Shown here one piece after another: positions 13,399 to 41,352 of a stretch of DNA of 64,000 nt. The stretch covers positions 1-64,000 of the IMG/VR virus record IMGVR_UViG_3300030098_004828; one strand, 5' to 3'. Made by a program: the position numbers and the translations under genes. How positions within the stretch are numbered: position 1 is the first letter of the stretch; each line of letters begins with the position of its first letter. Under the pieces are notes generated by a model, which was not told the origin of the DNA, did no database searches, and worked only from the letters and a program-made list of their open reading frames with translations.

Positions 13399-13514
13399 CA
13401 TACACATTCACACGCACATAAGAAAAGAATTAAACACTAAACAAAGCATAATGTGCATATACAACTGATATCATCAGGATATGGAGTGATCATGCTCTAT
13501 TTAAGTGAGTATTG

Positions 13515-13560: not shown

Positions 13561-13567
13561 CTTTAAT

Positions 13568-13593
13568 GGAAGGAGAGGATTGCTCCTCTCTTC
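13568..13593 (-). terminator. GCAA-tetraloop hairpin after 13605..14009
   Basis: GGAAGAGAGGA-GCAA-TCCTCTCCTTCC. Confidence 0.6.
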
Positions 13594-13604
13594 CACCCCA
13601 AGAA

Positions 13605-14009
13605 TTACTTCTTGGCTGCAGCCTTAGGCTTGTCCTCAGGCTCAGATGCTGCATCAGTCTCTTGCGAAGCAAGATACTTATCAGCATAGCCAGGTATTGG
13701 TTCAACCCAATACATGCCAGACTCTACGTCTGTAGGATTACCATCTTCATCCAGTTCCATTATTGGTACTGATGAGAATCTCCACCCAGGCATTTCCTGG
13801 TCCTGTTCAAGACCCAGTTCGTGGATGTCAACTCCTGTTGGCAAATCAACTGCAGCTATAAGACCCCAAGTAGTATCTTTAGATGCTTCTTGGTTTCTTG
13901 CCTCTACCACTACACCATTTATAATGGCTTTAGTTGTAGACAGCTTCTTAGATTTGACAATAAGAGCATCGCTCTTGTCACTCTGTTCATGGAAAATTAC
14001 TTTTTTCAT
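13605..14009 (-). CDS. Acidic hypothetical protein, first gene of leftward arm
   Basis: 134 aa, A-rich leader, followed by its own hairpin; more GC-rich than neighbours. Confidence 0.75.
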   Translation of the reverse strand: MKKVIFHEQSDKSDALIVKSKKLSTTKAIINGVVVEARNQEASKDTTWGLIAAVDLPTGVDIHELGLEQDQEMPGWRFSSVPIMELDEDGNPTDVESGMYWVEPIPGYADKYLASQETDAASEPEDKPKAAAKK

Positions 14010-14138
14010 AATAATAAAATTTTAATTGTTAATAATTATTTTTATGGGGCTAGGCCCCGCCAAAAATAAATTGGGGAGTTAAAACGCTAGGGCCCCATCA
14101 GAACTTTAAACACACAAAATTTTTTTGGCAAATAAAAA

Positions 14139-14151
14139 TTTAGTATATTAT
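14139..14151 (+). promoter_or_regulatory. Putative phage promoter TT(T/A)GTA(T/A)ATTAT (first of a recurring set)
   Basis: Recurs upstream of plus-strand genes at 24395, 27441, 30293, 31750, 33616, 39235, 59559. Confidence 0.65.
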
Positions 14152-14303
14152 ACTATAAGGAATTCACTATTAGGGATGGCTTCTTTTACAAAAAGGCATG
14201 TGCAGTATGAGGGGGGGATCAAAATAATAACCATTAATAGGGGGGATATAATTCGTATAGTGATAACGTTAATTAATTCGTAAACATTTAAAATATAAAA
14301 AAG

Positions 14304-21573: not shown

Positions 21574-24336
21574 ATGAGGGTACTTAATGCCTTACAAATA
21601 AAAAAGGGAGCGAAAGCTGATAATGATGGATATCCTGCTTCAGCAAGTTTAACTCAACCTGTACAATTTTTACCAGCTAAAAAGAAAACTGATGATTGGG
21701 CTGCATGGAATTTAGATTGGCTAGAATTGCAGGGAATGCAATATCTTAGAAATAATTCAAGAAAAATTTTAAAGAATTTTAAACTAGCTAAAGGTATTAT
21801 TGATAAAACGGATTATGTTGTAGAAGAAGATAATGACTATAAAGATTTAATGGACATCTTAACAAAAGAAGATGATTCTGCATTAGAATTAAAATTTTAT
21901 CCTATTATTCCTAATGTAATTAATGTTCTTTCAGGAGAATTTTCTAAGAGATTTAATAAAGTTCAATTTAGAGCAGTAGATGACTTGTCATATAATGAGA
22001 TGTTAGAAGAAAAAAGAAAGCTTGTAGAAGAAACATTATTACAAGAAGCTGAATCTAAAATGAAATTTAATCTAGCATCAATGGGTTTAGATATGAATAC
22101 TCCTGATGTACAACAGCAATTAGATCCTCAACAATTAAAAACACTTCCAGAAATAGAAGATTTCTTTTCTAAAGATTATAGAAGTTTAGTAGAAGAATGG
22201 GCATCTCATCAATTAAAAGTTGATGAAGAAAGATTTAAAATGCATGAACTTGAAGAAAGAGCTTTTAAAGATATGCTTGTTTGTGATAGAGAATTTTGGC
22301 ATTTTAAAATGATGGAAGATGATTACCATATAGAATTATGGAATCCAGTTTTAACATTCTATCAAAAATCTCCAGACACAAGATATATATCAGATTCTAA
22401 TTATGTAGGTAAATGTGATATGATGACGGTATCTGATGTAATAGATAACTTTGGTTATTTAATGACAGAAAAACAATTAAGATCTTTAGAAAATATACAT
22501 CCTATAAAATCTACTAAATATCAAATTAGAGGATATGATAATAGTACTGCATATGATCCAACAAAATCACATTCTTGGAATACTAATATGCCTTCATTAG
22601 GATATAGACAATTTGTAAGTAATTGGCAAGGTAGTCCTGAAGGAGGAGGAGATATTGTCCAATGGATTCTTAACGAAGGGGAAGATATATATAATTGGGG
22701 TGAAGCAGATATGTTAAGAGTTACAACTGTTTATTGGAAGACACAAAGAAAAGTTGGTCATTTAATACGTGTTGATGATGATGGTGAAATAACTCAAAAA
22801 ATTGTAGATGAAAGTTTTAAATTAACAGAAGAACCTGTTTATAATACAAATTTGTTTAAACAAAAAACAAAAGATAATCTTATTTTTGGTGAACATGTAG
22901 ATTGGATATGGATAAATGAAGTATGGGGCGGAGTTAAAGTAGGACCAAATTTACCTGCTACATGGAGACAAGGAAGTACAGAAATAAATCCTATTTATTT
23001 GGGTATTAATAAAGCTAAACCTGGAAGAATACAGTTTCAATTTAAAGGAGATAATAATCTTTATGGTTGTAAACTTCCAGTAGAAGGCAGGGTATTTTCA
23101 GATAGAAATACAAGATCTACTTCTTTAGTAGATTTAATGAAAGCATATCAGGTTGGTTATAATATGGTTAATAATCAAATAGCTGATATACTTGTAGATG
23201 AACTTGGTACTGTAATTATGTTTGATCAAAATGCATTACCACGTCATTCAATGGGAGAAGATTGGGGTAAGAATAATTATGCTAAAGCATATGTAGCAAT
23301 GAAAGACTTTGGTATGTTACCATTAGATACTTCTATTACTAATACTGAAAATGCTACAAACTTCAATCATTATCAAACATTAAATCTAGAACAAACAAAT
23401 AGATTAATGTCTAGAATACAATTAGCTAATCATTTTAAGCAACAAGCATTTGAAGCTATTGGAGTTAATCCGCAAAGATTAGGACAACCTATTGATCAAG
23501 AAACTGCAACAGGTGTAACTCAAGCAATGCAACAATCATATGCTCAAACTGAAATGTATTTTATACAACACTCAGATAATCTTATGCCTAGAGTACATCA
23601 AATGAGAACAGATCTTTCACAATATTATCATGCTAATAAACCTAGTTTAAGATTAAATTATATATCTAGTGAAGCTGAAAAAGTTAATTTTCAAATGAAT
23701 GGAACAGATTTATTAATGAGAGAATTTAATATTTTTTGTACTACAAGAACTAATCATAGAAATATATTAGATCAATTAAAACAATTAGCAATGACAAATA
23801 ATACATCAGGAGCTAGTATTTATGATCTTGGAAGTATTATTAAAGCTGATTCAATTGCTGAGGTTTCAGATATACTTAAAGATGCAGAAGCTAAAGCTGA
23901 TGCAGCTAGACAAGAGCAAATGCAATCACAACAGCAAATGCAAGAAAAACAACTTCAAGCACAAGCGCAAGAAAAAGAAATGGAGCGTCAATATCAAGCT
24001 CAAGAAAATGAAAAAGAAAGACAGAAAGATCTATTAGTTGCTGAAATAAGAGCAGCTAGTTATACAGGAGATCAAGATATTAATCAAAATCAGCAAAGTG
24101 ACTTCCGTGATGCAATGCAAGATATTACTCAAAGAGATCAATATAGAGAACAAATGGATTTTAAAAGAGAGGACTCTGTAAGGAAAGATGCTACTGCTCG
24201 TGAGAAAATGGATATTGAACGTGAAAAACTAAATACACAACGTCAAATTGCACAAACTAATTTAGATATTGCACGTGAAAATAAAAATAAATATGACTTC
24301 AAAAAAGAACCAACAAAGAAGAAAAAGAAAAGTTAG
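21574..24336 (+). CDS. Portal protein
   Basis: 920 aa after terL; FYPIIPNVINVLSGE, GVNPQRLG, ETATGVTQ motifs; Q-rich coiled-coil C-terminus as in crAss-like portals. Confidence 0.85.
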   Translation: MRVLNALQIKKGAKADNDGYPASASLTQPVQFLPAKKKTDDWAAWNLDWLELQGMQYLRNNSRKILKNFKLAKGIIDKTDYVVEEDNDYKDLMDILTKEDDSALELKFYPIIPNVINVLSGEFSKRFNKVQFRAVDDLSYNEMLEEKRKLVEETLLQEAESKMKFNLASMGLDMNTPDVQQQLDPQQLKTLPEIEDFFSKDYRSLVEEWASHQLKVDEERFKMHELEERAFKDMLVCDREFWHFKMMEDDYHIELWNPVLTFYQKSPDTRYISDSNYVGKCDMMTVSDVIDNFGYLMTEKQLRSLENIHPIKSTKYQIRGYDNSTAYDPTKSHSWNTNMPSLGYRQFVSNWQGSPEGGGDIVQWILNEGEDIYNWGEADMLRVTTVYWKTQRKVGHLIRVDDDGEITQKIVDESFKLTEEPVYNTNLFKQKTKDNLIFGEHVDWIWINEVWGGVKVGPNLPATWRQGSTEINPIYLGINKAKPGRIQFQFKGDNNLYGCKLPVEGRVFSDRNTRSTSLVDLMKAYQVGYNMVNNQIADILVDELGTVIMFDQNALPRHSMGEDWGKNNYAKAYVAMKDFGMLPLDTSITNTENATNFNHYQTLNLEQTNRLMSRIQLANHFKQQAFEAIGVNPQRLGQPIDQETATGVTQAMQQSYAQTEMYFIQHSDNLMPRVHQMRTDLSQYYHANKPSLRLNYISSEAEKVNFQMNGTDLLMREFNIFCTTRTNHRNILDQLKQLAMTNNTSGASIYDLGSIIKADSIAEVSDILKDAEAKADAARQEQMQSQQQMQEKQLQAQAQEKEMERQYQAQENEKERQKDLLVAEIRAASYTGDQDINQNQQSDFRDAMQDITQRDQYREQMDFKREDSVRKDATAREKMDIEREKLNTQRQIAQTNLDIARENKNKYDFKKEPTKKKKKS

Positions 24337-25776: not shown

Positions 25777-27393
25777 ATGGCAACTCCAGTTTTAAATAAT
25801 GGGATTTTCCTACGTGATACTAACTACAAAGTGAGTTCACATGTTGATTCTTATCACTTAACTAATATCTTGGGTTCTGCGGAACCAATGGATATGGGGC
25901 CGGTTGATATATGGGCTATGGCTCAAAAGGTAGAAATGCCTTTATATCAATTAGCATCATTTGGTGGAAAGAATACAATCATGGTGGATAACGCTCGTGG
26001 TGAGTATAAGTGGCAAACTCCCGTTGCACAAGACCTCCCATATTCGCTAGGCACATCAGCTGATGCAGATAGAGGGAAAGATGGAACTACGTTTAAAATT
26101 CTTTTGAGTTCAAGAGAGTTTGGGCATGGTGACATTATTACTTATGATAAGTATAATGGTGCTGAATTATACGTTACTGCAGAGGAAATAATTCCTTTTG
26201 GTGATGGTTTTCAGTATACTTGTCAACTTGTTAATAATAGCAATACAGCTGTTTTAGCAGACAAATATTTAGCGCACGGAACTAAATTCTTTAGAAAAGG
26301 TTCTGCACGTGGTGAATATGGTGAAAGATATTCAGATGTTCAAACAGGAACAGGTTTCAGAGAATTCTACAATTTTGTAGGAGGAGCTGAAGCACACGTT
26401 CATTATTCTATTTCTTCAAGAGCAGACTTAATGCTTAAAGGAGGAATGAATGCTGATGGTACTATTCCTGTAACAGAGATTTGGAGAACTTTTGACCAAA
26501 ATCTTAATCCTTCTGTTTCTTCACTTGAAAGTATGGTGGAAATTATGGGTAAAGACTATGTAAAGAGAGCGTTTGATAATGGTGATCTTTCTAGAACTTT
26601 CCTAACTAATTTAGAAGCAGCTCATCTTTCTAAGGTAGCTACTGATATTGAAACTTACTTAATGTGGGGTAATGGTGGTAGAATTAAGCAAGACGGACCA
26701 GATGACATGCGTCTATCTGTTGGTCTATGGCGTCAGTTAGACAACTCATATAAACGTGTTTATAATAAAGGAACCTTTAATATGGATATGTTTAAAAATG
26801 AATTGTATAACTTCTATCAAGGAAAAGTTGAATTAGATGGACCAGATCCTAAACGTACTTTAGTAGTACAAACAGGGATAGGTGGTATGAAATTAATAAA
26901 TGCTGCAATTGCTGCTGAAGCAGGTGGAATGGGTAGTAACTATGTTATTAATGCTGATAGTAACGGTATTGTAACAGGTTCTGGAATGAATCTAGGATTT
27001 GGATATGCATATACATCATATGTAATTCCATTCTTAGCAAATGTTCAGTTTGTACTTAACCCAGCATTTGATAGTTTACATACTAATGATATTGAGAATC
27101 CTTTAGTTGATGGCCGACCATTAAGTTCTTACTCATTTATAATCTTTGATGTAACTGACAATGGAAATGACAATATTCACTTATTGAAACTTTCATGGGA
27201 TAATGCATTAAAATGGTTCTATCAAAATGGAACTATGGATTATATGGGAAGATCTCAAGGGTTTGCTTCTTCTGGTAACTTCAATGGATATAGAGTTTAT
27301 ATGACTCAAACCATGCCTGCAATATGGGTGAAAGACCCTACTAAGGTATTGAAGATTGTTATGAAGAATCCAACTACTGGTGGATCATTCTAA
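25777..27393 (+). CDS. Major capsid protein
   Basis: 538 aa, position after scaffold, high-expression codon usage, followed by a strong terminator; crAss-like size. Confidence 0.8.
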   Translation: MATPVLNNGIFLRDTNYKVSSHVDSYHLTNILGSAEPMDMGPVDIWAMAQKVEMPLYQLASFGGKNTIMVDNARGEYKWQTPVAQDLPYSLGTSADADRGKDGTTFKILLSSREFGHGDIITYDKYNGAELYVTAEEIIPFGDGFQYTCQLVNNSNTAVLADKYLAHGTKFFRKGSARGEYGERYSDVQTGTGFREFYNFVGGAEAHVHYSISSRADLMLKGGMNADGTIPVTEIWRTFDQNLNPSVSSLESMVEIMGKDYVKRAFDNGDLSRTFLTNLEAAHLSKVATDIETYLMWGNGGRIKQDGPDDMRLSVGLWRQLDNSYKRVYNKGTFNMDMFKNELYNFYQGKVELDGPDPKRTLVVQTGIGGMKLINAAIAAEAGGMGSNYVINADSNGIVTGSGMNLGFGYAYTSYVIPFLANVQFVLNPAFDSLHTNDIENPLVDGRPLSSYSFIIFDVTDNGNDNIHLLKLSWDNALKWFYQNGTMDYMGRSQGFASSGNFNGYRVYMTQTMPAIWVKDPTKVLKIVMKNPTTGGSF

Positions 27394-28917: not shown

Positions 28918-30270
28918 ATGGATAATAATACATTACAAATAAAGTTTAAACAAAGGCTTAACAAAATTGCCAGTAATGACTATGATAATATAGAGTGTTG
29001 GCAAATTGTTGAAGCTTTTAATAAAGCTCAAATTGAATGGTGTAGAAGACAATTACGTGGAACCAATATGTATAAAGATGGTGATGAAATGTCTAAAAGA
29101 AGAGTGGATGATTTAGAAATTTTATTAAAGGAAGTAGATTTAATAGGGGACGATGTAAATTATGATAGTACATTTGGTTATTTTCAATCAAGTAATTTTC
29201 AAAATATTTATACTGGTGATTATCTAGAGTATAAAAGAATTAAAGCATCTGCTATACAGTGTGATCCTGGGGCTCCTGGTATTCCTGCACAACCAGGAAC
29301 TCCTGATGGTCCACCTACAGAAATACCAATATTTGAAGAAGTAGAATCAACAATTAGTGTACATTGGCCTATAGTTAGAACTAAAAATGGAATAACTATT
29401 ATGACTGGTAATCCATGCAATTATGTAGAATTTTCTGCATATTACTCTTCTGGTCCAGGTGAATGGACATTTGACTTTCCTGAAGCTTTTGTAACTACGT
29501 CTGGTACTATTATTACAGATCCTGAAGTATTAGCCACTCTTCCTCCAGAAGGTGATTATATGCAAACTTCAAGTTGTCCTACTGATGGTGATCCTGCAAT
29601 GCCTTCATCAATTTGGCAAGAAGGAGGAGATTGTTGGCCAATAGATAATGGAGATGGTACTTTTACACAAAATTTTCCTGATTGTTTGGATGGGTATAAT
29701 ACAAATTTTTTAGAATGTGATGGACTATGTTTTATAGTACCTGACTTTGGATCTAACTATACTTCATTTCTAACAACAATTGATACTGGTGAAGTAGAAG
29801 TTATTCCTGGTGAACCTGGTACACCTGGTACACCTGCAGTGCCAGCTGTTCCTTGTACATGTGCTCCCAATGTAGAAAAAGAAAAAGGATGTCAAGATCC
29901 AAGATCTATGACAGTATATTTATCAGAAGTAGGTAATGTAGATGTTATATTAAGAGATCCATTAAAAAATCCTGATTTTGATTGGGGTGAAACATTTGTA
30001 ACGTTTAAAGAGAAAGAATTAAGAATTTGGAGAAGTGATTTTTGGATAAGAGGTCCTGAATTAATTTATTACAGAAAACCTGTAAACATTCAAATTATAG
30101 ATTGTGTAGATCCATATACAGGGAGTCAATCAACAGTTGATGTTCCTTGTGAGTTTAAAGATGATATAGTAGAATTGATTATTGATGAAGCTGTTAGTAT
30201 TATAGCAGGTGACATAGGAGATATAAATAACTTTTCAAGGGGTTCACAATCAGCAGAAAAAAATAACTAG
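28918..30270 (+). CDS. Head-tail adaptor/ring protein with ~200-aa insertion
   Basis: Helical N-terminus (EAFNKAQ) and LIYYRKP...ELIIDEAV C-terminus typical of crAss-like ring proteins; Pro-rich-flanked insert. Confidence 0.6.
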   Translation: MDNNTLQIKFKQRLNKIASNDYDNIECWQIVEAFNKAQIEWCRRQLRGTNMYKDGDEMSKRRVDDLEILLKEVDLIGDDVNYDSTFGYFQSSNFQNIYTGDYLEYKRIKASAIQCDPGAPGIPAQPGTPDGPPTEIPIFEEVESTISVHWPIVRTKNGITIMTGNPCNYVEFSAYYSSGPGEWTFDFPEAFVTTSGTIITDPEVLATLPPEGDYMQTSSCPTDGDPAMPSSIWQEGGDCWPIDNGDGTFTQNFPDCLDGYNTNFLECDGLCFIVPDFGSNYTSFLTTIDTGEVEVIPGEPGTPGTPAVPAVPCTCAPNVEKEKGCQDPRSMTVYLSEVGNVDVILRDPLKNPDFDWGETFVTFKEKELRIWRSDFWIRGPELIYYRKPVNIQIIDCVDPYTGSQSTVDVPCEFKDDIVELIIDEAVSIIAGDIGDINNFSRGSQSAEKNN

Positions 30271-30358: not shown

Positions 30359-31675
30359 ATGGCTTATTTTAATCATGCATTTAAAAAATGTTTTGGTCCT
30401 GCTAAAGTTTTAAAAAACGCAGCTGGTGCTAAACCGTGGACATATGCTACTGGCGGTGACTTTGGAGCTTGTTTAGCTTCTGACTGGTCTGGCGTTACAT
30501 ATGCTACTGGAGCAACTGATATGGACTTGTTAAAACCTAATCAAGGGTTTTATCTTGTTGGTAAAGGATACAGAACATCTGATACAATTGGAAGCAACCC
30601 TGGGCATGGGGGTTACACTGAAACGTGGAAATCAAAAATGATTCTTCCAAAATATATTAATAAGATCTGGAAAACAAATGCTACTGAAGCTCAGGCTAAT
30701 AAAATTACTATTTCTACTTCCGCAGGTACAGCTAGTCAAAGTTGTTTTACTTGTGCTAGTGTAGGTGCAAATAATTTTCTTAGACTTGATGTTAAAGGTG
30801 CTGCAGCATTACGGTTTTTAAATCACAATGCTTATATGATTTTTGATACAGGTACTAGTTGTACTGCTTGTAATGGTGGTTATATGAATAATATATATGC
30901 TGTTAGAGAGTGGGCAATAGGAATTTGTGATGATCCAATTATTAATAAGTTTGTTAAAGTTAACAAAATGGTTTATAACTTAGCTGGTGGTGCCGGTGAT
31001 GTTACAGTTAATACATGTGCAACTATTAAAACAGATGCAGCTTTAAATACTGCAGCTACTGCTGGAACTTGGCTTGTTAACCAAACAGGTGAAATTGAAA
31101 TAGAAGCTGCTTATGTTGACACTGAGTGGGGATCTTGTTCATTTGAAACTACAGACTTTAGCCCATCTGCTGAAGATGATGGTAATGGTGTTGGAACAAC
31201 TGTTGCAAAAGGGGAACCTTTACAAATGCAAGTTTCATTCTTAGATGAATCAGGTACTGCTAATTCATGTGATTGTGCTGCTGCTCAAGGTACTAAAGCA
31301 ATTACTGTAAATACTACGGCTAAACAAGCAAATATTTCTGCTTATACAGTTATGAAAGATTTATTGTTAGATGAGAATTATGCTCAGATGCCGTATAATC
31401 AAGGTAATAGAGATAGTGCTAGATTTAGAAAGGCAGAAGGAAGTGACTTGTTATATGCTGAAGTTCATGCTGGTGGCTTGTATGAATCCTATGATGTATT
31501 ACATAGTGTACCTAGACGAAATAATCCTAGTGGGGTTATGGACAATGATCAGTATCATTATTCAGTCTATGTAAGAGCTGGTGCTAGTACTACGTTGTTA
31601 GATACAATGTGGGATGAGATGGCTGTTGCAGCGTTTGGATCAGGTTCAACTGCTGAAACTATTGATATACCTTAA
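30359..31675 (+). CDS. Structural protein (auxiliary capsid/decoration-like)
   Basis: Ala/Gly/Thr-rich 438 aa with own promoter motif and terminator. Confidence 0.55.
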   Translation: MAYFNHAFKKCFGPAKVLKNAAGAKPWTYATGGDFGACLASDWSGVTYATGATDMDLLKPNQGFYLVGKGYRTSDTIGSNPGHGGYTETWKSKMILPKYINKIWKTNATEAQANKITISTSAGTASQSCFTCASVGANNFLRLDVKGAAALRFLNHNAYMIFDTGTSCTACNGGYMNNIYAVREWAIGICDDPIINKFVKVNKMVYNLAGGAGDVTVNTCATIKTDAALNTAATAGTWLVNQTGEIEIEAAYVDTEWGSCSFETTDFSPSAEDDGNGVGTTVAKGEPLQMQVSFLDESGTANSCDCAAAQGTKAITVNTTAKQANISAYTVMKDLLLDENYAQMPYNQGNRDSARFRKAEGSDLLYAEVHAGGLYESYDVLHSVPRRNNPSGVMDNDQYHYSVYVRAGASTTLLDTMWDEMAVAAFGSGSTAETIDIP

Positions 31676-31696
31676 TTAAAGGTAATATCAGTTATT

Positions 31697-31730
31697 AAAG
31701 GAGGGGTAGAGTTAAATCTACCCCTTTTTT
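31697..31730 (+). terminator. Intrinsic terminator
   Basis: AGGGGTAGA-GTTAAA-TCTACCCCT-TTTTT. Confidence 0.8.
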
Positions 31731-31789
31731 ATTTCTATTATCTTTAATTTTTTGTATATTATTTATATAGTGCATTTAAAAGTTTATTT

Positions 31790-32341
31790 ATGGCAGCTAA
31801 ACATATACTAAGTCTAGAAATACCTGAAGTTGTAAATTGTGAAATATTTACAATAAAGGATACTAGTCAATACGCAGATAATCTAAATGTAGATTGTGGA
31901 AACTTACAAGTTTTATATCCAGGAGGTACAATCCCTGTTGTAATTAAATTAAATAAAGAATTCAATATGAACTTTAATACTTGTTCATTTGAATTAACAA
32001 CAACTGGTTGTGAAACATCAAGAGCATCATTTCCTGATGGAATTTATGTAATTAGATATAGTGTTGCACCACATGATAAATCATATGTAGAATATAATTA
32101 CTTAAGAGTAAGTAGTATAATGTCTACTTATTATGATAAACTTTGTGAGTTAGATGTTCAACCTTGTGAACCAAGTTCTGAAAAGCAACAATTATTAGCT
32201 GAAATGAGTTATATAAGAACTTTAATAGATGCTGCAAAAGCTAAAGTAGAATATTGTCATAGTCCTAGTGAAGGAATGGAACTTTATAATTTTGCAAAAA
32301 AGAAATTAAAGAAAATAACTTGTGACGTTTGTTGTAAATAA
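31790..32341 (+). CDS. Tail-associated structural protein (fibre hub-like)
   Basis: FPDGIYVIRYSV Ig-like strand, helical Cys-rich C-terminus. Confidence 0.5.
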   Translation: MAAKHILSLEIPEVVNCEIFTIKDTSQYADNLNVDCGNLQVLYPGGTIPVVIKLNKEFNMNFNTCSFELTTTGCETSRASFPDGIYVIRYSVAPHDKSYVEYNYLRVSSIMSTYYDKLCELDVQPCEPSSEKQQLLAEMSYIRTLIDAAKAKVEYCHSPSEGMELYNFAKKKLKKITCDVCCK

Positions 32342-32349
32342 TTTCAGAT

Positions 32350-33579
32350 ATGTCAGAACAATCATTACTTAAACAAATTAAAATAGAACAAACATTTGCA
32401 GATTATGTTTATAAAGATTATAGAGCAAAAAGATATGGAATGTCTCCATGTTGTTCTATAGATCAACTTCAAAAATATACAATCAAAAAAGAATTATGTC
32501 AATGGGAAAATAAAAAAGTTCCTATTTATTCAGGTACTTATGAAGATAGTACATCTACAGGTCATACTAATACTGATACAGAACCTTTTGTTTGGACTTT
32601 AAATGCAACTCCTGTTTATGAATGGGTGCAGATAATTTCAGAAACTGGTATATGTGCAGAAGGTATTGGTATAGGAGCTTGGCCTCCATTTTCTGATACA
32701 TTAGGAGGATGTGGTGGTTTTCTTGGAGATTTAAATGATAAAACAAAAATAGTTTGGTACATGCATCCTGATAGATTAGCAACACTTCCTAATACATCAG
32801 GAACTGCTAGATTAGTTGTATATATTGCTGATGCTGATGGTGATCAGGTTGGTATATGGGAAAAAGCACTTACAAATACTACAGCAATAACTCCAGTTAT
32901 GACAGACATTATAGTACCAAGTTCTACAGAGTGGTTACAAAATACTTCATATGATGCTTTAAAAATAGATGTACCTAGAACTTCTGTAGGTGGTACAGCA
33001 GTTCAATGTCCTTCTGCTGGATATACAGCGGGTAAAAATGGTGTTAATGCCAGTGAAGTAATGACTTTTTATATAGTAGATGGAACAGATGTACACACTT
33101 TAGTATGGGATGGTTGGGGTTCTTGGTTTGGAGGTGCTTCAGGTGCAGCATGGCCTTGTTGTCCTATTTCAAATGGAACTTCAAGAATACTTGATACAGG
33201 GACTTTAACAATTACAAAAATTTGTCCTGATACAACACCAAATTCAATTCATTTTTGTGGAATGACAGCTGCTTCAACAAATGGAGGTACATGCGTAAAT
33301 GATTCAGAATGTATATATATACAAGTGGTAGATCAAAATGGAAATCCAATGAAGGAATTTCCAATTATTATAGATGGTGAATTGTCAGGTTATACAAATG
33401 ATTTAGGAGTATATAAAACTACAATAATTAATGCCGGAACTGTAACAAAACATATATTAAATAATTGTCATTGTTTTACAACAAAAGGTGAATGCCGGCA
33501 ACAAAAAATATTATTAACTGTCAATGATAGTACATCAAAAGAAGCATGTGATACACCACCTGCGCCTTTGTGTACTTAA
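32350..33579 (+). CDS. Cys-rich structural protein
   Basis: Beta-rich; C-terminal IQVVDQNGNP...IDG...GYTNDLG prealbumin-like strand pattern. Confidence 0.55.
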   Translation: MSEQSLLKQIKIEQTFADYVYKDYRAKRYGMSPCCSIDQLQKYTIKKELCQWENKKVPIYSGTYEDSTSTGHTNTDTEPFVWTLNATPVYEWVQIISETGICAEGIGIGAWPPFSDTLGGCGGFLGDLNDKTKIVWYMHPDRLATLPNTSGTARLVVYIADADGDQVGIWEKALTNTTAITPVMTDIIVPSSTEWLQNTSYDALKIDVPRTSVGGTAVQCPSAGYTAGKNGVNASEVMTFYIVDGTDVHTLVWDGWGSWFGGASGAAWPCCPISNGTSRILDTGTLTITKICPDTTPNSIHFCGMTAASTNGGTCVNDSECIYIQVVDQNGNPMKEFPIIIDGELSGYTNDLGVYKTTIINAGTVTKHILNNCHCFTTKGECRQQKILLTVNDSTSKEACDTPPAPLCT

Positions 33580-33668
33580 ATTGAGTATTTAAACAACTTG
33601 GTTGTTAATTTAAAAAATTGTATATTATAGTATATAGTAAGTAAATTGCAGCTGTAAAAAATATATTT

Positions 33669-36600
33669 ATGATACCAAGTAATACAGGAGGTAAAACTAA
33701 CGGATGTGACCCAACATCATCAAATTGTGTAGTTTGGCAAGGACCAAACTTAGATTGCATTGGATTATGCACAGGAGATACTGTTAGTACAGTAATTGCA
33801 AAATTAGCTGAAAAGCTTTGTTCTGTAGTTGCTGACAGTTGTGGTGAGTGCACCATAGACTTAGGTACAGTTGATGAAAAATGTATTCAAGTAGATCCTA
33901 CCACTCAAAATCCTTTACCACCTGCTGCTAATATTCAAGAACTTTTAACAAGAATAATAAATTATGTTTGTTATGTAGAAGACATATTACAAGAATGTTG
34001 TCAAGATACAATTATTAGTGTTCCTACTGTTGCTGGTGAAATAAGAAGTCCTTATTCACCTGATAACCCTTTTATAAGAAAGATATCTAATAGCATGTAT
34101 CCTCATGACGCAGCTAAAGGTTTAGAAGCTGAAAAATGGATCATGGTAAGTTTAGCTGCATCTTATGATATTATAAAACAAATAAAATCTTTACAAAATG
34201 AAGAAAAAGGTTTAAATGATAGAGTAAAGAAATTAGAAAGACAATCTGCTAAAACACTTGTATTACCTAAAGTAATTTCTAAATGTGTATCAAGACCAGG
34301 AACAGCTGTAGAAATGAAAACTTTATTAACAGCTCTTGAGTCAGCGTTTTGTAGTTTAAGAACTGTTGTAGGTTCACCTAGTGATGTTTTAAGATCTATT
34401 AAGTTTCAACCTGCTACATTAGGTACAGATTCTAGATTAAATGGAAAAGGAAGTATGAGAGATATGGCTGGATGGATAGTTGGTGCTAATGATATAGCTG
34501 GTTCTTTAACTAATTCATGGTTAACTATTGCTGATCTAAGAAATGCTGTTTTAGATTTACAAAAAAATACAACACCGGCTGCTGTTACATGGATGGATGA
34601 TTTAAATGTAAAAGCAAGATTTAAAATGTCAGGACCATCTGTTTCTGGTATAGTTTTAGATTTTTCAGATAATGCAAATGTTATACCTTCTACATTTTAT
34701 GATACAGATAGAGGGCGTGGATCTAAAATAACAATTAAAGATTCTTCTTTAAATTCTGTATATAAATATGTTCAAATATCACAAAATAAAGCTAATACAG
34801 CTTATTCTATAGATGATTTAGGTAGTATTGACAAAACAAGTAATATGGAAATTACTATAGATATACAACTTACAGATGGTGATAATTTTGTTGGTAAATC
34901 TATAAATATTAGTTTAACAAATAAAAGTATAGTTCCAACTGTTTCAACTTCTGCTATAACTAAAAATTCTTTTCAATATACAGTAAGTGGTATAAATACT
35001 ACTGTTGGAAATACAATAAAAATTTCAACAGAAACACCTGGTGGTACACTTAAAGATGTTGCTGTTTATTCAGCTCCTAGTGCAATTATAACTGGTACAG
35101 TTACTGGTTTAGATGAAGGAACAAGCTATAAAGTTTTTGCAACAGTTATAACCAAAACAGGTGTAGAAACAGAAGGTGAAAAAATTCAAGTTACTACAAC
35201 TGCACCAACATGTACAGCAGTTCATGTTACTGCAAGTACATTTAAAACAGCATTAACAGATTTTAAAACAGGTGCAACTAAAACTGTTTTATCAGTTTAT
35301 AATGATACTGTAAATAATAATCAAGTTGTTTTTGGATTTGATAATGGTAATAACCCTATAGCATATAAAGGTACAGCAGATACCTATACAGCACCTTCTG
35401 GAACTTTTATAACATATGGCACACTTGTAAGTAAAAATCCAACTACATTTATTACTTGCAATAATGTAGTATATGCAAGCGGATTATCTGCAAGTAATAC
35501 AGGAAGTGGTTGGGAATATGTAACAGCCTCAACATCACCAAATGGAATAACTTATTATATATATGCATTAGTTAATAAAATGACTAAAACAATATTAGAA
35601 GTTGTTGCTTGTTGTGATTGCAAAGCTCTTTATTTAGTAGATACAGATGATGATGTTTATTTTGTACCAACCAATCAACATAGAACAATAAGTGTAAATG
35701 TTGCAGGAGCAACTGCAGGAGCAGTTGGAACTTGGACTATTGTTTCACAACCTACTAAGGGATCAGCATCACTTTCTACTACTGCTACTAGTACTGAAGG
35801 TATATTTAATTATACAGCTTCATCAACCGATCCTTGGGTATCAGATTCATTTTCTGTTAAATTAACAAATGATTGTGGAGTAAGTAATACAATTACAATT
35901 CCTATACAAAGAGCAACTGTATTACCATATAATGATACAGATATTGTTGTAATGGTAGATGCTAATTCAACTTCATATGCAGATGCTGATAAAATAAAAA
36001 CAACTTTTGAAAGTATAAAAACTCAAATTCAAACAATTTGTAATACATGGACAGGTACTATTTATTATGTACCAGTTGATAGAACAACTGGAGCAAATAC
36101 TAGTGCTGATTATTTAAATTATGGATTAGCAATGGTAGATAAAAAGGGTGGTACTTCAGGTTCTCTTACAGTTGCAACTGGTGCTACTACATGGGATCTA
36201 TTTAAATCAGAACCTCCTTATTGGGGAGCTGCATCTACAGGTCCTGTTCCAGCTTCTACATATATTTTTGCAATAACAAATCAAGGTAATACAAATGGTA
36301 GTTATGCTGATGCTTCTTTATCTACAGGATGGGGGTCACAACCATCAGCTCAATATGACACAGATTTTGATGGAGTTAATGATATGTTAACATTAGCAGG
36401 AGGTGGTACAGCTAAAAGTGCATGGGGTTCAGGTAAAACACATAAATACTTTAATGATGCAGCAGGTAATTTAAAATTTGCTCAAGTTAATATATGCCAA
36501 TTAACTGGATCATTAAATGAAAGTGCTGCAACTGCACTTCAAATGACTGGTTCAATTGTTGGAAGAAAATTAACTCTTTCTGAATTTAATGGTTTTAAAG

Positions 36601-37181
36601 TTGGAGGCATTCAGTATCCAATAGACTTAAGAAATTATATATTAGATGGAACAGCTCCAGTATCAGTGCCATATGGAACCGGTACTACAGCTGGTGGATA
36701 TTCTAGAGATGGTATACATAAATTAAATTATATACCAACTCTTTTTGTAGAAAGTGGGTATGATTGGTCAGCAATTGCATTTAATAAGCTTATATTAAGT
36801 ATAATGGGCTTAAGAAGTGGATCTACAGGTATAGGATGTGCTACTACTTCTCCAACTGCTCAAAATATGATAAGTGGTTCTCATAAAACATTTGGAACAC
36901 ATGCTACAGTTTGTGCAACTGCTTGTTCAAATGCAGCAAGTTCAACCGGTTTAGTTGAATTATTTAATTCTACAGGTACAGTATTTGATACTGCCGTTAG
37001 AGCCTATAGTACTTTAAACGGTGCTATATTAGGAGGAACAACTGGTGGATCAGATTATGATGAACTTACAGCTGGTCATTGGTATTGTCTTAGAGATGGT
37101 TCAGGTGCTGGAACTAGAAGAGTTGCAAGATATAATGCATCAGCTCCTTTTTGGACAGAAAAAACTTGTGCAACATGTTAA
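33669..37181 (+). CDS. Tail fibre/adhesin-like protein
   Basis: Cys-rich N-terminus, coiled coil, FN3-like (VTGLDEGTSYKV), cadherin/Ig-like (SQPTKGSA...DSFSVKL) and vWA-like (DIVVMVDANS) segments. Confidence 0.65.
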   Translation: MIPSNTGGKTNGCDPTSSNCVVWQGPNLDCIGLCTGDTVSTVIAKLAEKLCSVVADSCGECTIDLGTVDEKCIQVDPTTQNPLPPAANIQELLTRIINYVCYVEDILQECCQDTIISVPTVAGEIRSPYSPDNPFIRKISNSMYPHDAAKGLEAEKWIMVSLAASYDIIKQIKSLQNEEKGLNDRVKKLERQSAKTLVLPKVISKCVSRPGTAVEMKTLLTALESAFCSLRTVVGSPSDVLRSIKFQPATLGTDSRLNGKGSMRDMAGWIVGANDIAGSLTNSWLTIADLRNAVLDLQKNTTPAAVTWMDDLNVKARFKMSGPSVSGIVLDFSDNANVIPSTFYDTDRGRGSKITIKDSSLNSVYKYVQISQNKANTAYSIDDLGSIDKTSNMEITIDIQLTDGDNFVGKSINISLTNKSIVPTVSTSAITKNSFQYTVSGINTTVGNTIKISTETPGGTLKDVAVYSAPSAIITGTVTGLDEGTSYKVFATVITKTGVETEGEKIQVTTTAPTCTAVHVTASTFKTALTDFKTGATKTVLSVYNDTVNNNQVVFGFDNGNNPIAYKGTADTYTAPSGTFITYGTLVSKNPTTFITCNNVVYASGLSASNTGSGWEYVTASTSPNGITYYIYALVNKMTKTILEVVACCDCKALYLVDTDDDVYFVPTNQHRTISVNVAGATAGAVGTWTIVSQPTKGSASLSTTATSTEGIFNYTASSTDPWVSDSFSVKLTNDCGVSNTITIPIQRATVLPYNDTDIVVMVDANSTSYADADKIKTTFESIKTQIQTICNTWTGTIYYVPVDRTTGANTSADYLNYGLAMVDKKGGTSGSLTVATGATTWDLFKSEPPYWGAASTGPVPASTYIFAITNQGNTNGSYADASLSTGWGSQPSAQYDTDFDGVNDMLTLAGGGTAKSAWGSGKTHKYFNDAAGNLKFAQVNICQLTGSLNESAATALQMTGSIVGRKLTLSEFNGFKVGGIQYPIDLRNYILDGTAPVSVPYGTGTTAGGYSRDGIHKLNYIPTLFVESGYDWSAIAFNKLILSIMGLRSGSTGIGCATTSPTAQNMISGSHKTFGTHATVCATACSNAASSTGLVELFNSTGTVFDTAVRAYSTLNGAILGGTTGGSDYDELTAGHWYCLRDGSGAGTRRVARYNASAPFWTEKTCATC

Positions 37182-37199
37182 TAATTAAAATTTAAAAAA

Positions 37200-37862
37200 A
37201 TGGCTTGTAATACGTGCGGAAATACTACTTCAAATCCTTGTGCTTGTCAAGACACAAGTTTAACATTACCATCTAATTGTCAATATACAGATGAGTCATG
37301 TATAGGTAAAGAAACATGTGCTGATATTCAATGTGAAGAATGTGTAAGCTGGTGTAGATGTACACCATATGATAAAGATAATTATCCATATACAGATTTC
37401 TTTTATATGAAAAATGCAAATTCTGATACTATATGGGTAAAGTGTGGGGAAAGATTAGACATGACTTTACAAAAAATGACATTATTTATGACAAAACCTA
37501 CCACATGGAAACATCATATTCCATTATTTTATCATGGTAAAGTAACTACAGATTCTATTGAATTATTTTGGGATGGTGTTCCTACAGCTAATGATCCTGT
37601 TTCTGGAGCAGTTGATCTTACAGGTATACAAATATGGCAAAGAAATGTAACAGCAGCAGGACCTTGGGTTCAAGCTAATACACAATTATTAACAACTGCA
37701 CCATATTATGAAGCTGCCTTAGCAACAGGAACAACTAAGAATTTTGTAGCAGGAGGTTTAAATCCTAATTCAGTATGGGAGTTTCATTTAAAAAGTACCA
37801 TAGCTGGTCCAGTAACAGAACAAGCTAGTGTAACAATAAGAGCAAAAACACTAGCACCATAA
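37200..37862 (+). CDS. Cys-rich FN3-domain structural protein
   Basis: Cys-dense N-terminus; VTTDSIELFW...GLNPNSVWEFHL FN3 signature. Confidence 0.65.
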   Translation: MACNTCGNTTSNPCACQDTSLTLPSNCQYTDESCIGKETCADIQCEECVSWCRCTPYDKDNYPYTDFFYMKNANSDTIWVKCGERLDMTLQKMTLFMTKPTTWKHHIPLFYHGKVTTDSIELFWDGVPTANDPVSGAVDLTGIQIWQRNVTAAGPWVQANTQLLTTAPYYEAALATGTTKNFVAGGLNPNSVWEFHLKSTIAGPVTEQASVTIRAKTLAP

Positions 37863-39784: not shown

Positions 39785-40456
39785 ATGACAACAATAGGTG
39801 ATGTAGTATCAAGAATCAGAAATCAAATGAAAGCTGAATCTCAAGATGCTTTTGTAACTGATAGATATTTATATAGTCTGGTTAGTAAGTTTGCACAACT
39901 TCTAATGAGAAGACAAGACTCTGCTAATAAACTTATGAAATTTAATAGTATATGGCAACCATTGCCGTTTGTTGAATTAATAGAAGTAGATAAAGTAGAA
40001 GCAGAATGTGCAGGAATTCAAAGCGGATGTACTATAAAAAGAACAAAGCATAAACTTCCAACATTTATGGAAGGTTATTGGGGACCTTTAATTAGAACAG
40101 TAAGTTCTATAGATGGATCTATAGAGTGTCAACCTACTATGCCAGGTACCTATACTTCAATGACAAAAACAACATCATTTAAATATAATAAGAATAAGTA
40201 TTTTTGGTGGTTAAATGGTTATATATATATGCCAAATGTAGAATGGGATGCTATAAAGTTAGAAGGTATATTTAATGGAGATATTTCAGAATGGAATTGT
40301 GATGAAAAAGATAATTGTAAACCTAGATATTTACAACAAATTTTTATTCCAGAATTTTTATTTGCAGAAATAGAAAAGATGGTAATAGCTGAAATGTTAA
40401 ATACTATGAAAATACCACAAGAAGATGCAGATAATAAAGTTAATATACAAAGATAA
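39785..40456 (+). CDS. Tail ring/tubular protein
   Basis: TIGDVVSRIRN...YFWWLNGYIY...IPQEDADN; synteny. Confidence 0.6.
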   Translation: MTTIGDVVSRIRNQMKAESQDAFVTDRYLYSLVSKFAQLLMRRQDSANKLMKFNSIWQPLPFVELIEVDKVEAECAGIQSGCTIKRTKHKLPTFMEGYWGPLIRTVSSIDGSIECQPTMPGTYTSMTKTTSFKYNKNKYFWWLNGYIYMPNVEWDAIKLEGIFNGDISEWNCDEKDNCKPRYLQQIFIPEFLFAEIEKMVIAEMLNTMKIPQEDADNKVNIQR

Positions 40457-41352
40457 TGGCAATATCACATAAATACAGAACATTTGATCAATTACTTGAA
40501 GATGTATCTATTGATTTTTCTAGTTATGCCTTAGAAGGTATGATTGAACCTCAACAGTTAATTAAAGTAGCTATTAGAGTTAATTATGATTTAGGTTTAA
40601 AAATAAATAGTACAAAAGAATTGCTTGTACATATAGAACATAGTAAAGGTAAATTACCTAAAGATTTTAAATACTTAAATTATGCATACGTATGTGGAGA
40701 ATATAAAAAAGTTTCTACACCTCCTTCTGGTACTCATGTTGATACAACAAATCCAAAATACGTACCATCTCCAGATGATCTTGGTCCTTGTACAGATCCT
40801 ACTTGTAGTAAAGTATGTGTTGTTCAAACAGGATGTGATAAACCTAATCAAGAAGAATATATGCTAATACAATATGTAGGTGCAGAACAATATAATACAT
40901 ATACTCAATTTTTTCCATTAAAAATAATAGATAAAGTAGGTGCAACTGTATGTGATTGTCCAAATATAAATCAGCAAGCTGTTGATAAAGCTGAAATTAA
41001 AGATGGATTTTTATTAACTAATTTTAAAACAGGTAATGTATATATAAATTATCAAGGTGCTATGGAAAATGAGGAAGGTGATTTATTAGTATTAGATCAT
41101 CCTTATTGTAATGAATATTATGAATATGCATTAAAACAAAGAATACTTGAAAATATGGCTATGAATGGAGAGCAAGGTGCTGCACAACAATTAAACTTAA
41201 TTGAACAAAGATTAAGAGCTGCAAGAAATAATGCGTTAGGATTTGTTAATACTCCTGATTTTGCAGAGTATAAAAAAATGTGGGAAGTTAATAGAAGAGC
41301 ACAATATCATAATTACTATAATATGTTTAAAAGTCATCCTACAGTAAGATAA
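40456..41352 (+). CDS. Tail tubular protein (P22 gp4-like class)
   Basis: KGKLPKDF, IKDGFLLTNFKTGNVYINY motifs; directly upstream of the muzzle gene. Confidence 0.65.
   Translation: MAISHKYRTFDQLLEDVSIDFSSYALEGMIEPQQLIKVAIRVNYDLGLKINSTKELLVHIEHSKGKLPKDFKYLNYAYVCGEYKKVSTPPSGTHVDTTNPKYVPSPDDLGPCTDPTCSKVCVVQTGCDKPNQEEYMLIQYVGAEQYNTYTQFFPLKIIDKVGATVCDCPNINQQAVDKAEIKDGFLLTNFKTGNVYINYQGAMENEEGDLLVLDHPYCNEYYEYALKQRILENMAMNGEQGAAQQLNLIEQRLRAARNNALGFVNTPDFAEYKKMWEVNRRAQYHNYYNMFKSHPTVR

What the first reader, a model, noticed from the sequence alone, without database searches (positions are those of the whole stretch)
29260..29862. Stalk-and-knob insertion in a head-tail ring protein
Seen: a ~200-aa acidic Cys-rich domain is flanked by mirrored 3-residue-period Pro repeats, C-D-PGA-PGI-PAQ-PGT-PDG-P on entry and PGE-PGT-PGT-PAV-PAV-P-CTC on exit, each adjoining a short strand (TEIPIFEEV / TGEVEVI). 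Inference: an antiparallel polyproline stalk pinned by a disulfide displays a variable knob on the virion neck, a modular display device.
Basis: partly seen in the sequence, partly recalled or inferred. Interest (0 to 1): 0.6.

Follow-up and report, generated by a model that had tools for sequence, protein, structure and literature searches.

The report
Variable knob on crass-phage tail ring
A marine crAss-like phage carries a ~210-residue "lollipop" in one surface loop of a tail-barrel ring protein: two matched proline-rich segments holding an acidic, cysteine-rich knob. Related phages have nothing, or quite different knobs, at exactly the same loop, which makes it a likely swappable surface-display site on the tail.

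Summary
ORF 28918-30270 (450 aa) has two arrays of six prolines at period 3 (residues 117-132 and 297-312). They flank an acidic (pI 4.05) segment with 10 cysteines, closed by C115 on entry and C313/C315/C325 on exit.

- **Host protein.** It is a crassvirus tail-barrel ring protein of the R3/R4/R5 type. The best match is phicrAss001 Ring protein 3 (Z 17.8, 216 of 226 residues aligned). It is not the portal-proximal neck ring; R1 and R2 are separate genes at 39785-41352.
- **One variable site.** Among 82 complete homologues (247-657 aa), all length variation sits at this one loop. 28 have only a 5-37 aa loop. The rest carry 46-412 aa inserts, and the large ones (over 100 aa) fall into at least six mutually unrelated sequence classes.
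- **This knob is an orphan.** Only weak cadherin/Ig-like similarity was found.
- **A direct comparison.** A second, syntenic genome in the same 245.6-kb record has TerL and MCP 82-84% identical, yet carries a different knob.
- **Still inferred.** The paired stalk and disulfide pin rest on indirect evidence only: equal array lengths, a Gly/Ala stripe, self-symmetric stalk motifs in two other classes, and Cys co-occurrence. AlphaFold could not model the knob.

The most likely role is an outward-displayed accessory adhesin. I rate it a new variant of a known kind.

The parts
28918..30270 (+). Tail-barrel ring protein gene of the R3/R4/R5 type, 450 aa (P0001), carrying the insertion
   Evidence: ORF. 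The AF2 core has pLDDT above 90. Foldseek gives 7qoj_D at E 5e-7, TM 0.81 by target. VIA-align gives Z 17.8, rmsd 2.8, 216 of 226 aligned. 7qoj_D is Ring protein 3 gp35.
28918..29259 (+). N-terminal core, residues 1-114: three helices and the first strands of the beta-sandwich
   Evidence: DSSP and pLDDT. It aligns to every homologue at HMM positions 2-107.
29260..29262 (+). Entry cysteine C115
   Evidence: A Cys at this position co-occurs with the exit CxC...C pattern in all 21 homologues that carry the entry Cys together with CxC. DSSP shows a bridge at 115-116.
29266..29319 (+). Entry proline array, residues 117-134: six Pro at period 3, with position 2 mostly Gly or Ala
29317..29346 (+). 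Entry strand-like segment, residues 134-143
   Evidence: Alternating pattern in the sequence. AF2 confidence is low here. The analogous long base strands are predicted in the E330-class insert.
29347..29784 (+). Knob, residues 144-289: acidic, with six Cys (167, 220, 239, 256, 267, 271); no close relatives
   Evidence: No Pfam hit. No word-search relative. The all-library HMMER search found only weak hits to cadherin-like and Big repeat proteins. hhalign against those repeats gives E 2.7e-4 over 51 columns for residues about 196-252. pLDDT is below 50.
29785..29805 (+). Exit strand-like segment, residues 290-296
29806..29859 (+). Exit proline array, residues 297-314: six Pro at period 3, a direct repeat of the entry array
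   Evidence: DNA repeat D1, 36 nt at 75% identity. pLDDT is about 71.
29854..29862 (+). Exit C313-T314-C315 (CxC)
   Evidence: DSSP shows a bridge at 314-315.
29863..29892 (+). Conserved exit junction, residues 316-325, ending in C325. Nearly all large inserts share it; the short forms lack it.
   Evidence: hhalign against the B200 class gives E 1e-5 for this junction. pLDDT is 83-88.
29893..30267 (+). C-terminal core, residues 326-450: the rest of the beta-sandwich and two C-terminal helices
   Evidence: There is a weak phrog_29507 (virion structural protein) match at 344-426.
39785..40456 (+). Context: Ring protein 2 gene
   Evidence: PF25702 CrAss_Ring_2, E 7e-18.
40456..41352 (+). Context: Ring protein 1 gene
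   Evidence: PF24228 CrAss_Ring_1, E 1.5e-8.
25777..27393 (+). Context: crassvirus major capsid protein, three genes upstream
   Evidence: PF23898 Crass_capsid, E 3e-28.

Best explanation
**Shown**
- The gene encodes the R3/R4/R5-type ring protein of the tail barrel of an uncultured marine crAss-like phage.
- One loop of its beta-sandwich is a family-wide insertion hot-spot. In minimal homologues this loop is only a vicinal Cys-Cys turn.
- In this phage the loop holds about 210 residues, in this order: C115, six Pro-x-x triplets, a short strand, an acidic six-Cys globular part, a short strand, six Pro-x-x triplets, C313-x-C315, and a conserved ten-residue junction ending in C325.

**Inferred: architecture**
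- The two equal-length proline arrays form extended PPII segments of about 5 nm. They run antiparallel, side by side.
- The short strands continue them as a beta-ribbon.
- The four junction cysteines close the base, probably as C115 with C313 or C315, and the remaining one with C325.
- Each subunit therefore holds a disulfide-stabilised knob several nanometres off the outer wall of the barrel, giving twelve knobs per ring.

**Inferred: function**
- The knob is an accessory adhesion module for a host-surface or capsule component.
- It may be calcium-stabilised and Ig/cadherin-like.
- It can be exchanged between related phages while the ring scaffold and stalk junctions are kept.
For: **Identity of the core**
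- (Z 17.8 to Ring protein 3 gp35).
- Weak sequence links to gp34 and gp35 but not to gp40 or gp43.
- One family member hits PF25710 CrAss_Ring_3_4 and six hit PF24175 SU10_adaptor.
- Gene order matches phicrAss001.

**A single hot-spot**
- Every homologue splits at HMM position about 106-113.
- The large inserts fall into at least six unrelated sequence classes.

**Exposure**
- Inserts of up to 412 aa in 12 copies cannot fit a lumen with constrictions under 50 Å.
- In phicrAss001 the fibre hubs bind R1 and R2, not R3-R5 (PMC10172136).

**Stalk pairing**
- The arrays have identical length and Pro count; position 2 is G/G/A/G/D/P and G/G/G/A/A/C.
- In all five D260-class inserts one motif occurs exactly twice, 25-33 residues from the entry and 37-45 from the exit. 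The three closely related B200-class inserts carry another motif at 35 and 46. That is the pattern expected of a two-fold symmetric antiparallel pair.
- The AF2 model of the E330-class insert has long base strands at 8-20 and 309-321.

**Disulfide pin**
- An entry Cys goes with exit CxC...C in 21 homologues. No entry Cys goes with exit CC in 24.
- DSSP bridges sit at 115-116 and 314-315, and the base has pLDDT 83-88.
- Disulfides stabilise the phicrAss001 tail.

**Variable or host-facing role**
- The second genome in the record shares 82-84% TerL and MCP identity but has an unrelated insert. The next five genes downstream (30359-37859) are only 27-61% identical, four of them 27-33%, ahead of a 95% identical gene.
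- Within the cluster of variants at least 98% identical, 9 variable sites fall in the knob and 2 in the core (Fisher p = 0.009).
- There is weak cadherin-like similarity.
Against: - AlphaFold gives pLDDT below 50 for residues 135-295 and only 47-85 for the proline arrays, so the stalk geometry is not predicted with confidence.
- No coordinates were available, so no Cys-Cys distances could be measured.
- The Cys co-occurrence may reflect only two or three lineages rather than many independent events (tree).
- Insert class mostly follows the core phylogeny: 17 changes, where 11 is the minimum possible. Exchange is therefore occasional, not rampant.
- No knob class matches a known binding domain: Pfam found nothing and the E330 fold searches found nothing.
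- The cadherin-like similarity is below Pfam detection and partly compositional.
- Faster change in the knob could reflect relaxed constraint rather than selection by the host.
Confidence: 0.55

Rival explanations
1. Flexible tethers, not a stalk. The proline arrays are independent, extended, protease-resistant linkers, like the Pro/Thr or Ala/Pro linkers of multidomain enzymes. They do not pack against each other, and the flanking cysteines bond elsewhere: within the core, or between subunits as ring 'chainmail'. The knob would then be a loosely tethered decoration.
For: Confidence across the arrays is low to moderate. In relatives the entry and exit Pro-rich segments often differ in length, for example P0002 with 10 against 28 residues and P0049 with an interrupted exit array. 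In phicrAss001 the reported tail disulfides are between subunits.
Against: In this protein the arrays match exactly, at six Pro over 16 residues each. The position-2 Gly/Ala stripe is typical of close-packed PPII helices. Self-symmetric stalk motifs occur in two other classes. An entry Cys appears only together with extra exit Cys.
Confidence: 0.25
2. Structural role rather than adhesin. The twelve knobs would form a collar, a brace between rings, or a docking platform for the fibre or hub proteins encoded just downstream. The knob would then co-vary with its partner proteins, not with the host receptor.
For: The related podovirus adaptor fold (Z 9-11) uses its beta-sandwich as a fibre dock in T7 gp11 (my recollection, not checked here). 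The genes just downstream (30359-37859) diverge together with the knob between the two genomes of the record. phicrAss001 ring proteins are disulfide-linked to hub proteins.
Against: About a third of the family's complete homologues have no insert at all and still keep the same core, so the knob is dispensable for assembly. In phicrAss001 the hubs dock on R1 and R2, not R3-R5. A long stalk suits display better than a rigid dock.
Confidence: 0.2
3. Collagen-like triple helix. The Pro-Gly-x arrays of three neighbouring subunits would assemble into short parallel triple helices, as in the collagen-like segments of some phage fibres.
For: Period-3 Pro with frequent Gly. Collagen-like repeats do occur in prophage tail proteins (PMC3368898, seen only in the listing).
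Against: Gly is missing from 2 of 6 triplets on entry and 3 of 6 on exit. Relatives have Glu, Asp or Ile at that position. Six triplets is very short. One up-going and one down-going segment per subunit fits a hairpin, whereas a collagen helix is parallel.
Confidence: 0.03
4. Not a true domain of the protein: an intein, a mobile-element insertion, or an assembly or frame artefact.
For: The insert is bounded by cysteines and has no relatives.
Against: No Hint, intein or endonuclease match. There is no His-Asn before the exit Cys. The frame is continuous. The identical protein is on 22 contigs, and independent metagenome contigs span it. The insert's codon-level variants keep the frame.
Confidence: 0.01

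Closest known systems
phicrAss001 Ring protein 3 (gp35) and Ring protein 4/5 (gp34), PDB 7QOJ chains D-F; Pfam PF25710 CrAss_Ring_3_4
   Same: Same two-domain fold of three helices plus a beta-sandwich, over essentially the whole chain: Z 17.8, rmsd 2.8 Å, 216 of 226 aligned. Same position downstream of the capsid gene. R1 and R2 are encoded separately.
   Different: gp34 and gp35 are 230-238 aa with no inserted domain. Sequence similarity is marginal: hhalign E 8e-4 to 9e-3, and P0001 itself has no Pfam hit. Here one sandwich loop carries about 210 extra residues.
Podovirus adaptor / tail tubular protein A (T7 gp11-like; SU10, N4, Pa223, A4, KP32 gp31); Pfam PF24175
   Same: Related fold at Z 9-11 over 165-180 residues. 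Six family members hit PF24175 (not used). The sandwich domain is outward-facing and acts as a fibre dock in T7 (my recollection, not tested here).
   Different: Those proteins form the single ring under the portal. This one belongs to the crassvirus multi-ring barrel and matches R3 far better. None of the listed adaptors has a comparable stalk-and-knob insert.
phicrAss001 muzzle protein gp44 ('crass domain' built from insertions into Ig-domain loops)
   Same: The same evolutionary device in the same virus order: large insertions into beta-sandwich loops of a tail protein, with length variation between crassviruses that is proposed to alter surface properties (PMC10172136).
   Different: A different protein (hexameric tail tip) and a different insert, with no proline stalk. 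Insertions in ring proteins are not mentioned in that paper.
Streptococcal antigen I/II adhesins (hairpin stalk presenting a variable lectin-like head)
   Same: A design analogy only, from my recollection: a chain goes out and comes back, a PPII segment forms half of a long two-stranded stalk, and a globular variable domain sits at the tip.
   Different: In those adhesins the PPII strand pairs with an alpha-helix and the stalk is tens of nanometres long. There is no homology and no disulfide clamp, and the context is cell-wall anchoring rather than a virion.
Ig-like decoration domains of tailed phages (such as T4 Hoc and the lambda gpV C-terminal domain)
   Same: Dispensable, surface-exposed, fast-evolving accessory domains on structural proteins, thought to give weak binding to carbohydrates. 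The knob shows weak cadherin/Ig-like similarity.
   Different: Those domains are usually terminal additions recognisable by Pfam. Here the domain is inserted within a loop on a stalk and is not recognised by any profile.

Membership tests
Crassvirus tail-barrel ring protein R3/R4/R5 (PF25710; 7QOJ D-F) | Two-domain fold: three conserved alpha-helices plus a beta-sandwich | tested here: met
   The AF2 core has pLDDT above 90. Foldseek gives E 5e-7, TM 0.81 by target. VIA-align gives Z 17.8 with 216 of 226 aligned. The chain's identity was confirmed.
Crassvirus tail-barrel ring protein R3/R4/R5 (PF25710; 7QOJ D-F) | Sequence match to the family profile above threshold | tested here: inconclusive
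   P0001 has no Pfam hit at E up to 0.1. One homologue hits PF25710 at 4.5e-4. hhalign gives E 0.0086 over 180 columns to gp34 and 8e-4 to gp35, and nothing to R1 or R2.
Crassvirus tail-barrel ring protein R3/R4/R5 (PF25710; 7QOJ D-F) | Genomic context: downstream of the crassvirus MCP, with separate R1 and R2 genes in the same structural block | tested here: met
   MCP matches PF23898. R2 matches PF25702 and R1 matches PF24228. The order matches phicrAss001 gp32-gp43. There is one copy per genome.
Crassvirus tail-barrel ring protein R3/R4/R5 (PF25710; 7QOJ D-F) | Assembles as a dodecameric ring in the virion tail barrel | not testable with these tools
   This needs virions, or a 12-mer model with coordinates.
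Collagen-like triple helix | Gly at every third residue over a long uninterrupted run | tested here: not met
   Position 2 of the triplets is G,G,A,G,D,P on entry and G,G,G,A,A,C on exit, with only six triplets each.
Known phage Ig-like / cadherin-like decoration domains (Big_x, Cadherin_4/5, Fn3) | Significant match to a domain profile, or a confident Ig-like fold | tested here: inconclusive
   No Pfam hit even at E 10. The library-wide phmmer search finds a cadherin-like repeat protein at E 1.3e-8, summed over 5 repeats. Pairwise BLASTP gives 6e-7 and hhalign 2.7e-4 over 51 columns. The knob's fold is not predicted.
Intein | Hint-domain blocks, and a C-terminal His-Asn followed by Cys, Ser or Thr | tested here: not met
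   No Hint or endonuclease profile hit. The insert ends Val-Pro before the Cys.
   Only indirect support is available. No coordinates are returned by the tools, and there is no experiment.

The most novel reading that the evidence does not exclude
Marine crAss-like phages use one loop of their distal tail-barrel ring protein as a general display socket. The scaffold would be a disulfide-clamped, two-fold pseudo-symmetric PPII/beta hairpin. Unrelated receptor-binding knobs would be mounted on it and occasionally exchanged. The barrel itself would then carry a crown of 12 or more host-recognition modules, contributing to host range independently of the tail fibres and the muzzle.
Probability: 0.3. 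Interest if true: 0.75.

Novelty: new variant of a known kind. Interest (0 to 1): 0.6.

Why it matters
- **A gap in the reference picture.** The one solved crassvirus (phicrAss001) has bare ring proteins. Its tail barrel is read as a spacer and cargo store.
- **What this family adds.** In a large marine branch of crass-like phages the same ring protein carries 46-412 residue surface modules of many unrelated kinds at a single loop. The barrel wall would then be a site of host interaction, or at least of rapid surface evolution.
- **Practical consequences.** It would help predict hosts of uncultured marine crassviruses, and help interpret the highly variable block next to this gene.
- **A possible engineering use.** The matched proline arrays with a cysteine clamp could serve as a compact natural scaffold for displaying foreign domains from a loop of a 12-fold ring.

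Tried and rejected
**Looking for known relatives of the whole protein**
- Sequence search of P0001 against PDB chains gave nothing significant. The best hit was an Fn3 domain at E 0.26 covering the entry segment; I treat it as a lead only.
- tblastn against GenBank phages gave no match.
- TerL is only about 26% identical to gut crass-like phages, so there is no close cultured relative.

**Looking for relatives or a fold for the knob**
- The word search restricted to the knob found only the protein itself.
- The ESM Atlas search of the knob gave no usable feature hit, and structural neighbours had TM at or below 0.32.
- Pfam on knob pieces at E up to 10 gave only noise.
- hhalign of the knob against the D260 and B200 insert classes aligned only the exit junction.

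**A sibling insert class**
- I folded a sibling insert class (E330) to learn the fold of a knob. The model had mean pLDDT 65.
- Foldseek found no match at E up to 0.001, and VIA-align against 48,161 chains gave a best Z of 2.3. No functional clue came from it.

**Other checks**
- ORF 37200-37859 (220 aa) is not a fourth ring paralogue.
- Intein, collagen and artefact readings are rejected (see the rival explanations).
- The contigs laid cannot give allele frequencies. The 'skip' joints at 85% likeness most likely come from related phages, and I do not use them as evidence for insert-less alleles of this phage.
- Complex prediction was not used. I claim no new protein pair, and the tool returns no geometry.
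Full report
**1. What is in the sequence**

The finding lies inside one ORF, 28918-30270 on the + strand, of 450 aa (P0001). Its coordinates 29260-29862 run from C115 to C315.

The entry reads C115, D116, then six prolines exactly three residues apart (117 to 132), then a strand-like run at 134-143. The exit reads a strand-like run at 290-296, then six prolines three apart (297 to 312), then C313-T314-C315.

Between the conserved core blocks the inserted segment has pI 4.05, 32 acidic against 4 basic residues, 10 Cys and 29 Pro. Shuffling this already proline-rich segment yields one run of six period-3 prolines in 6.6e-4 of trials and two runs in none of 200,000. In the six-frame translation of the whole 64-kb window these are the only two arrays of six; the only other match to the four-repeat pattern is one 12-residue run.

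The arrays are direct repeats of one another: D/E, PG-x, PG-x, PA-x, P. At DNA level they form a 36-nt repeat at 75% identity. They are not mirror images.

**2. What the protein is**

The window belongs to a crAss-like phage:
- The capsid gene at 25777-27393 matches PF23898 Crass_capsid (E 3e-28).
- The portal gene is at 21574-24336 (phrog_6547).
- Ring protein 2 (PF25702) is at 39785-40456 and Ring protein 1 (PF24228) at 40456-41352.

P0001 itself matches no Pfam family. An AlphaFold model built on 78 homologues is very confident outside the insert, with pLDDT 83-98 over most of residues 1-120 and 311-430 (dipping to 78 at 51-60).

That core matches phicrAss001 chain 7qoj_D. Foldseek gives E 5e-7 with TM 0.81 by target. 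VIA-align gives Z 17.8, rmsd 2.8 Å, 216 of 226 residues aligned. Chain D is Ring protein 3 gp35, and chains E and F are Ring protein 4/5 gp34. The next best matches are single-ring podovirus adaptors at Z 9-11.

Profile comparison gives weak but collinear matches to gp34 and gp35, and none to R2 gp40 or R1 gp43. Within the family, one member reaches PF25710 CrAss_Ring_3_4 and six reach PF24175 SU10_adaptor. The gene order from the capsid gene to the ring genes matches phicrAss001 gp32-gp43.

The protein is therefore the single R3/R4/R5-type ring protein of this phage. It builds the distal part of the tail barrel, not the portal-proximal neck. In phicrAss001 the fibre hubs bind R1 and R2, not R3-R5 (PMC10172136).

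**3. It is an insertion at a family-wide hot-spot**

The word search returned 95 homologues of 247-657 aa, mostly from marine metagenomes. I aligned them all to an HMM built from the short forms. Every length difference falls at one place, HMM position about 106-113.

Among the 82 complete sequences:
- 28 have a loop of 5-37 residues that usually starts with Glu-Cys-Cys.
- Two have 46-residue loops.
- The rest carry 109-412 residues.

The large inserts fall into at least six sequence classes with no detectable similarity between their interiors. The knob of P0001 is a singleton among them.

Nearly all large inserts share a ten-residue exit junction that the short forms lack. On a core-only tree they form one group with 99% SH-aLRT support. 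This suggests one founding insertion whose interior was later replaced.

Insert class mostly follows the core tree, with 17 changes where 11 is the minimum. Replacement is therefore occasional. P0001 is itself mosaic: its core groups with the D260 class (SH-aLRT 90), while its exit stalk resembles the B200 class (41% identity over 58 residues; junction E 1e-5).

**4. A direct comparison inside the same record**

The window is the first 64 kb of a 245,646-bp IMG/VR record. That record holds two complete, collinear, related genomes in tandem, offset by about 121-130 kb. TerL is 84% identical between them and MCP 82%.

The second ring protein (379 aa) is 66-68% identical to P0001 in the core. Between residues 115 and 315 it carries a wholly different insert of the A139 class.

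The next five genes downstream (30359-37859) are only 27-61% identical, four of them 27-33%. They are followed by a 95% identical exonuclease-like gene. The knob therefore sits at the edge of the most divergent structural block.

**5. Population data**

The exact protein occurs on 22 contigs, and the gene turns up in marine runs from eight studies. Contigs from four independent studies cover the junctions or the whole insert with 0-8 differences.

In one run the conserved core blocks have hundreds of times the word depth of the insert. This fits many co-occurring relatives that share the core but not this knob (table 2).

Among six variants at least 98% identical, nine variable positions lie in the knob, one in an array, two in the C-terminal core and none in the N-terminal core. 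Fisher's test gives p = 0.009.

**6. The stalk and the pin: inferred, not shown**

In favour of a paired stalk:
- The two arrays have identical length and proline count.
- In a PPII helix with three residues per turn, the triplet positions form three stripes. These are Pro; mostly Gly or Ala (G,G,A,G,D,P and G,G,G,A,A,C); and a variable stripe. A small-residue stripe is what close-packed PPII helices show (established knowledge of collagen and PPII bundles).
- Two other insert classes have stalks built from a motif that occurs once near the entry and once near the exit, at matching distances. All five D260 members show this, as do three of the four B200 members. That is the signature of a two-fold symmetric antiparallel pair.
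- The AF2 model of the E330-class insert starts and ends with long strands (8-20 and 309-321). This points to a beta-ribbon stalk in that class.

In favour of a disulfide pin:
- A Cys right at the entry goes with the exit pattern CxC plus one further Cys in 21 sequences. Sequences without an entry Cys keep the vicinal CC at the exit in 24.
- The model places backbone bridges at 115-116 and 314-315, and the base is confident.
- The phicrAss001 tail is disulfide-stabilised.
- The insert has an even number of Cys: four at the junctions and six in the knob.

Against:
- pLDDT is 47-85 over the arrays and below 50 in the knob.
- No coordinates were available to measure anything.
- The Cys pattern may trace to few lineages.
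- Entry and exit arrays are unequal in some relatives.

Two arrays of 16-18 residues at about 3.1 Å per residue would give roughly 5 nm, plus the ribbon.

**7. What the knob may be**

No profile recognises it. After the word search and family scans left it open, I spent the one large HMMER search on the knob alone. It found four weak hits, all to repeat proteins made of cadherin-like or bacterial Ig-like domains.

Residues about 196-270 align with each repeat of one such protein (34-38% identity, E about 6e-7 pairwise). hhalign against the repeat profile gives E 2.7e-4 over 51 columns. The shared motifs are Asp/Gly-rich turns of the kind that bind calcium in those domains (my recollection).

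This is a lead, not a classification.

**8. Mechanism and rivals**

My preferred reading, at about 0.55, is an outward-facing, disulfide-closed hairpin stalk presenting an exchangeable accessory adhesin, with twelve per ring.

The outward orientation rests on two arguments. Inserts of up to 412 residues in 12 copies cannot sit in a channel with constrictions under 50 Å. The sandwich domain of the related adaptors faces outward (my recollection).

The rivals are:
- unpaired flexible tethers (0.25);
- a structural collar or fibre dock rather than an adhesin (0.2);
- a collagen-like trimer (0.03; the Gly periodicity is broken);
- an intein or an artefact (0.01).

**9. Novelty**

The fold and the protein family are known. 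A stalk-and-knob insertion in a crassvirus ring protein, and a family-wide insertion hot-spot there, are not described in the phicrAss001 structure paper. They are also absent from the other papers my two full-text searches returned. I rate it a new variant of a known kind, with interest 0.6.

Noticed in passing
whole record G000 (window = its bases 1-64000); second genome from about 124.8 kb to 245.6 kb: The 245,646-bp IMG/VR record, rated 100% complete, holds two full, collinear, related crass-like genomes in tandem. Replication and packaging genes are 80-99% identical between them, while tail genes are 27-51% identical. This is either a chimeric assembly of two co-occurring phages or an unusual dimeric record.
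   Followed up: partly
window 30359-37859: This block of five genes (438, 183, 409, 1170 and 220 aa) has no family matches, and four of the five are only 27-33% identical to their counterparts in the second genome (the 183-aa gene is 61%). One counterpart is 1138 aa against 409 aa here. The block lies between well conserved genes and is probably the host-range region.
   Followed up: partly
window 37992-39200: A 402-aa DNA-repair exonuclease-like gene (phrog_704, E 9.5e-47) sits in the middle of the tail-structure block. It is 95% identical between the two genomes, far more conserved than its structural neighbours.
   Followed up: no
window 41363-49549, 49549-59538, 59594-64000 (runs on to 67309 in the record): There are consecutive giant ORFs of 2728, 3329 and 2572 aa, and further ones of 5791 and 2593 aa beyond the window. 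They are only 29-51% identical between the two genomes. In phicrAss001 this position holds the muzzle, cargo and virion RNA polymerase genes.
   Followed up: no
window about 12300-14300: The strand and GC skew switch here, with locally raised G+C (0.367 against about 0.29). No ORF of 90 aa or more lies between 12308 and 13605. ARAGORN finds no tRNA in the window.
   Followed up: no
homologues P0002, P0004, P0005, P0014, P0020 (D260 class) and P0034, P0045, P0049 (B200 class): In these insert classes a short motif occurs exactly twice, once about 25-35 residues after the entry and once about 37-46 residues before the exit. The stalks therefore appear internally two-fold symmetric.
   Followed up: yes
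short homologues such as P0060, P0071 and P0083, at the loop equivalent to window 29257-29262: The minimal ring proteins keep a nearly invariant vicinal Cys-Cys at the hot-spot loop, plus other conserved core cysteines (residues 27, 42, 396 and 411 in P0001). This suggests a disulfide network in the ring even without the insert.
   Followed up: no
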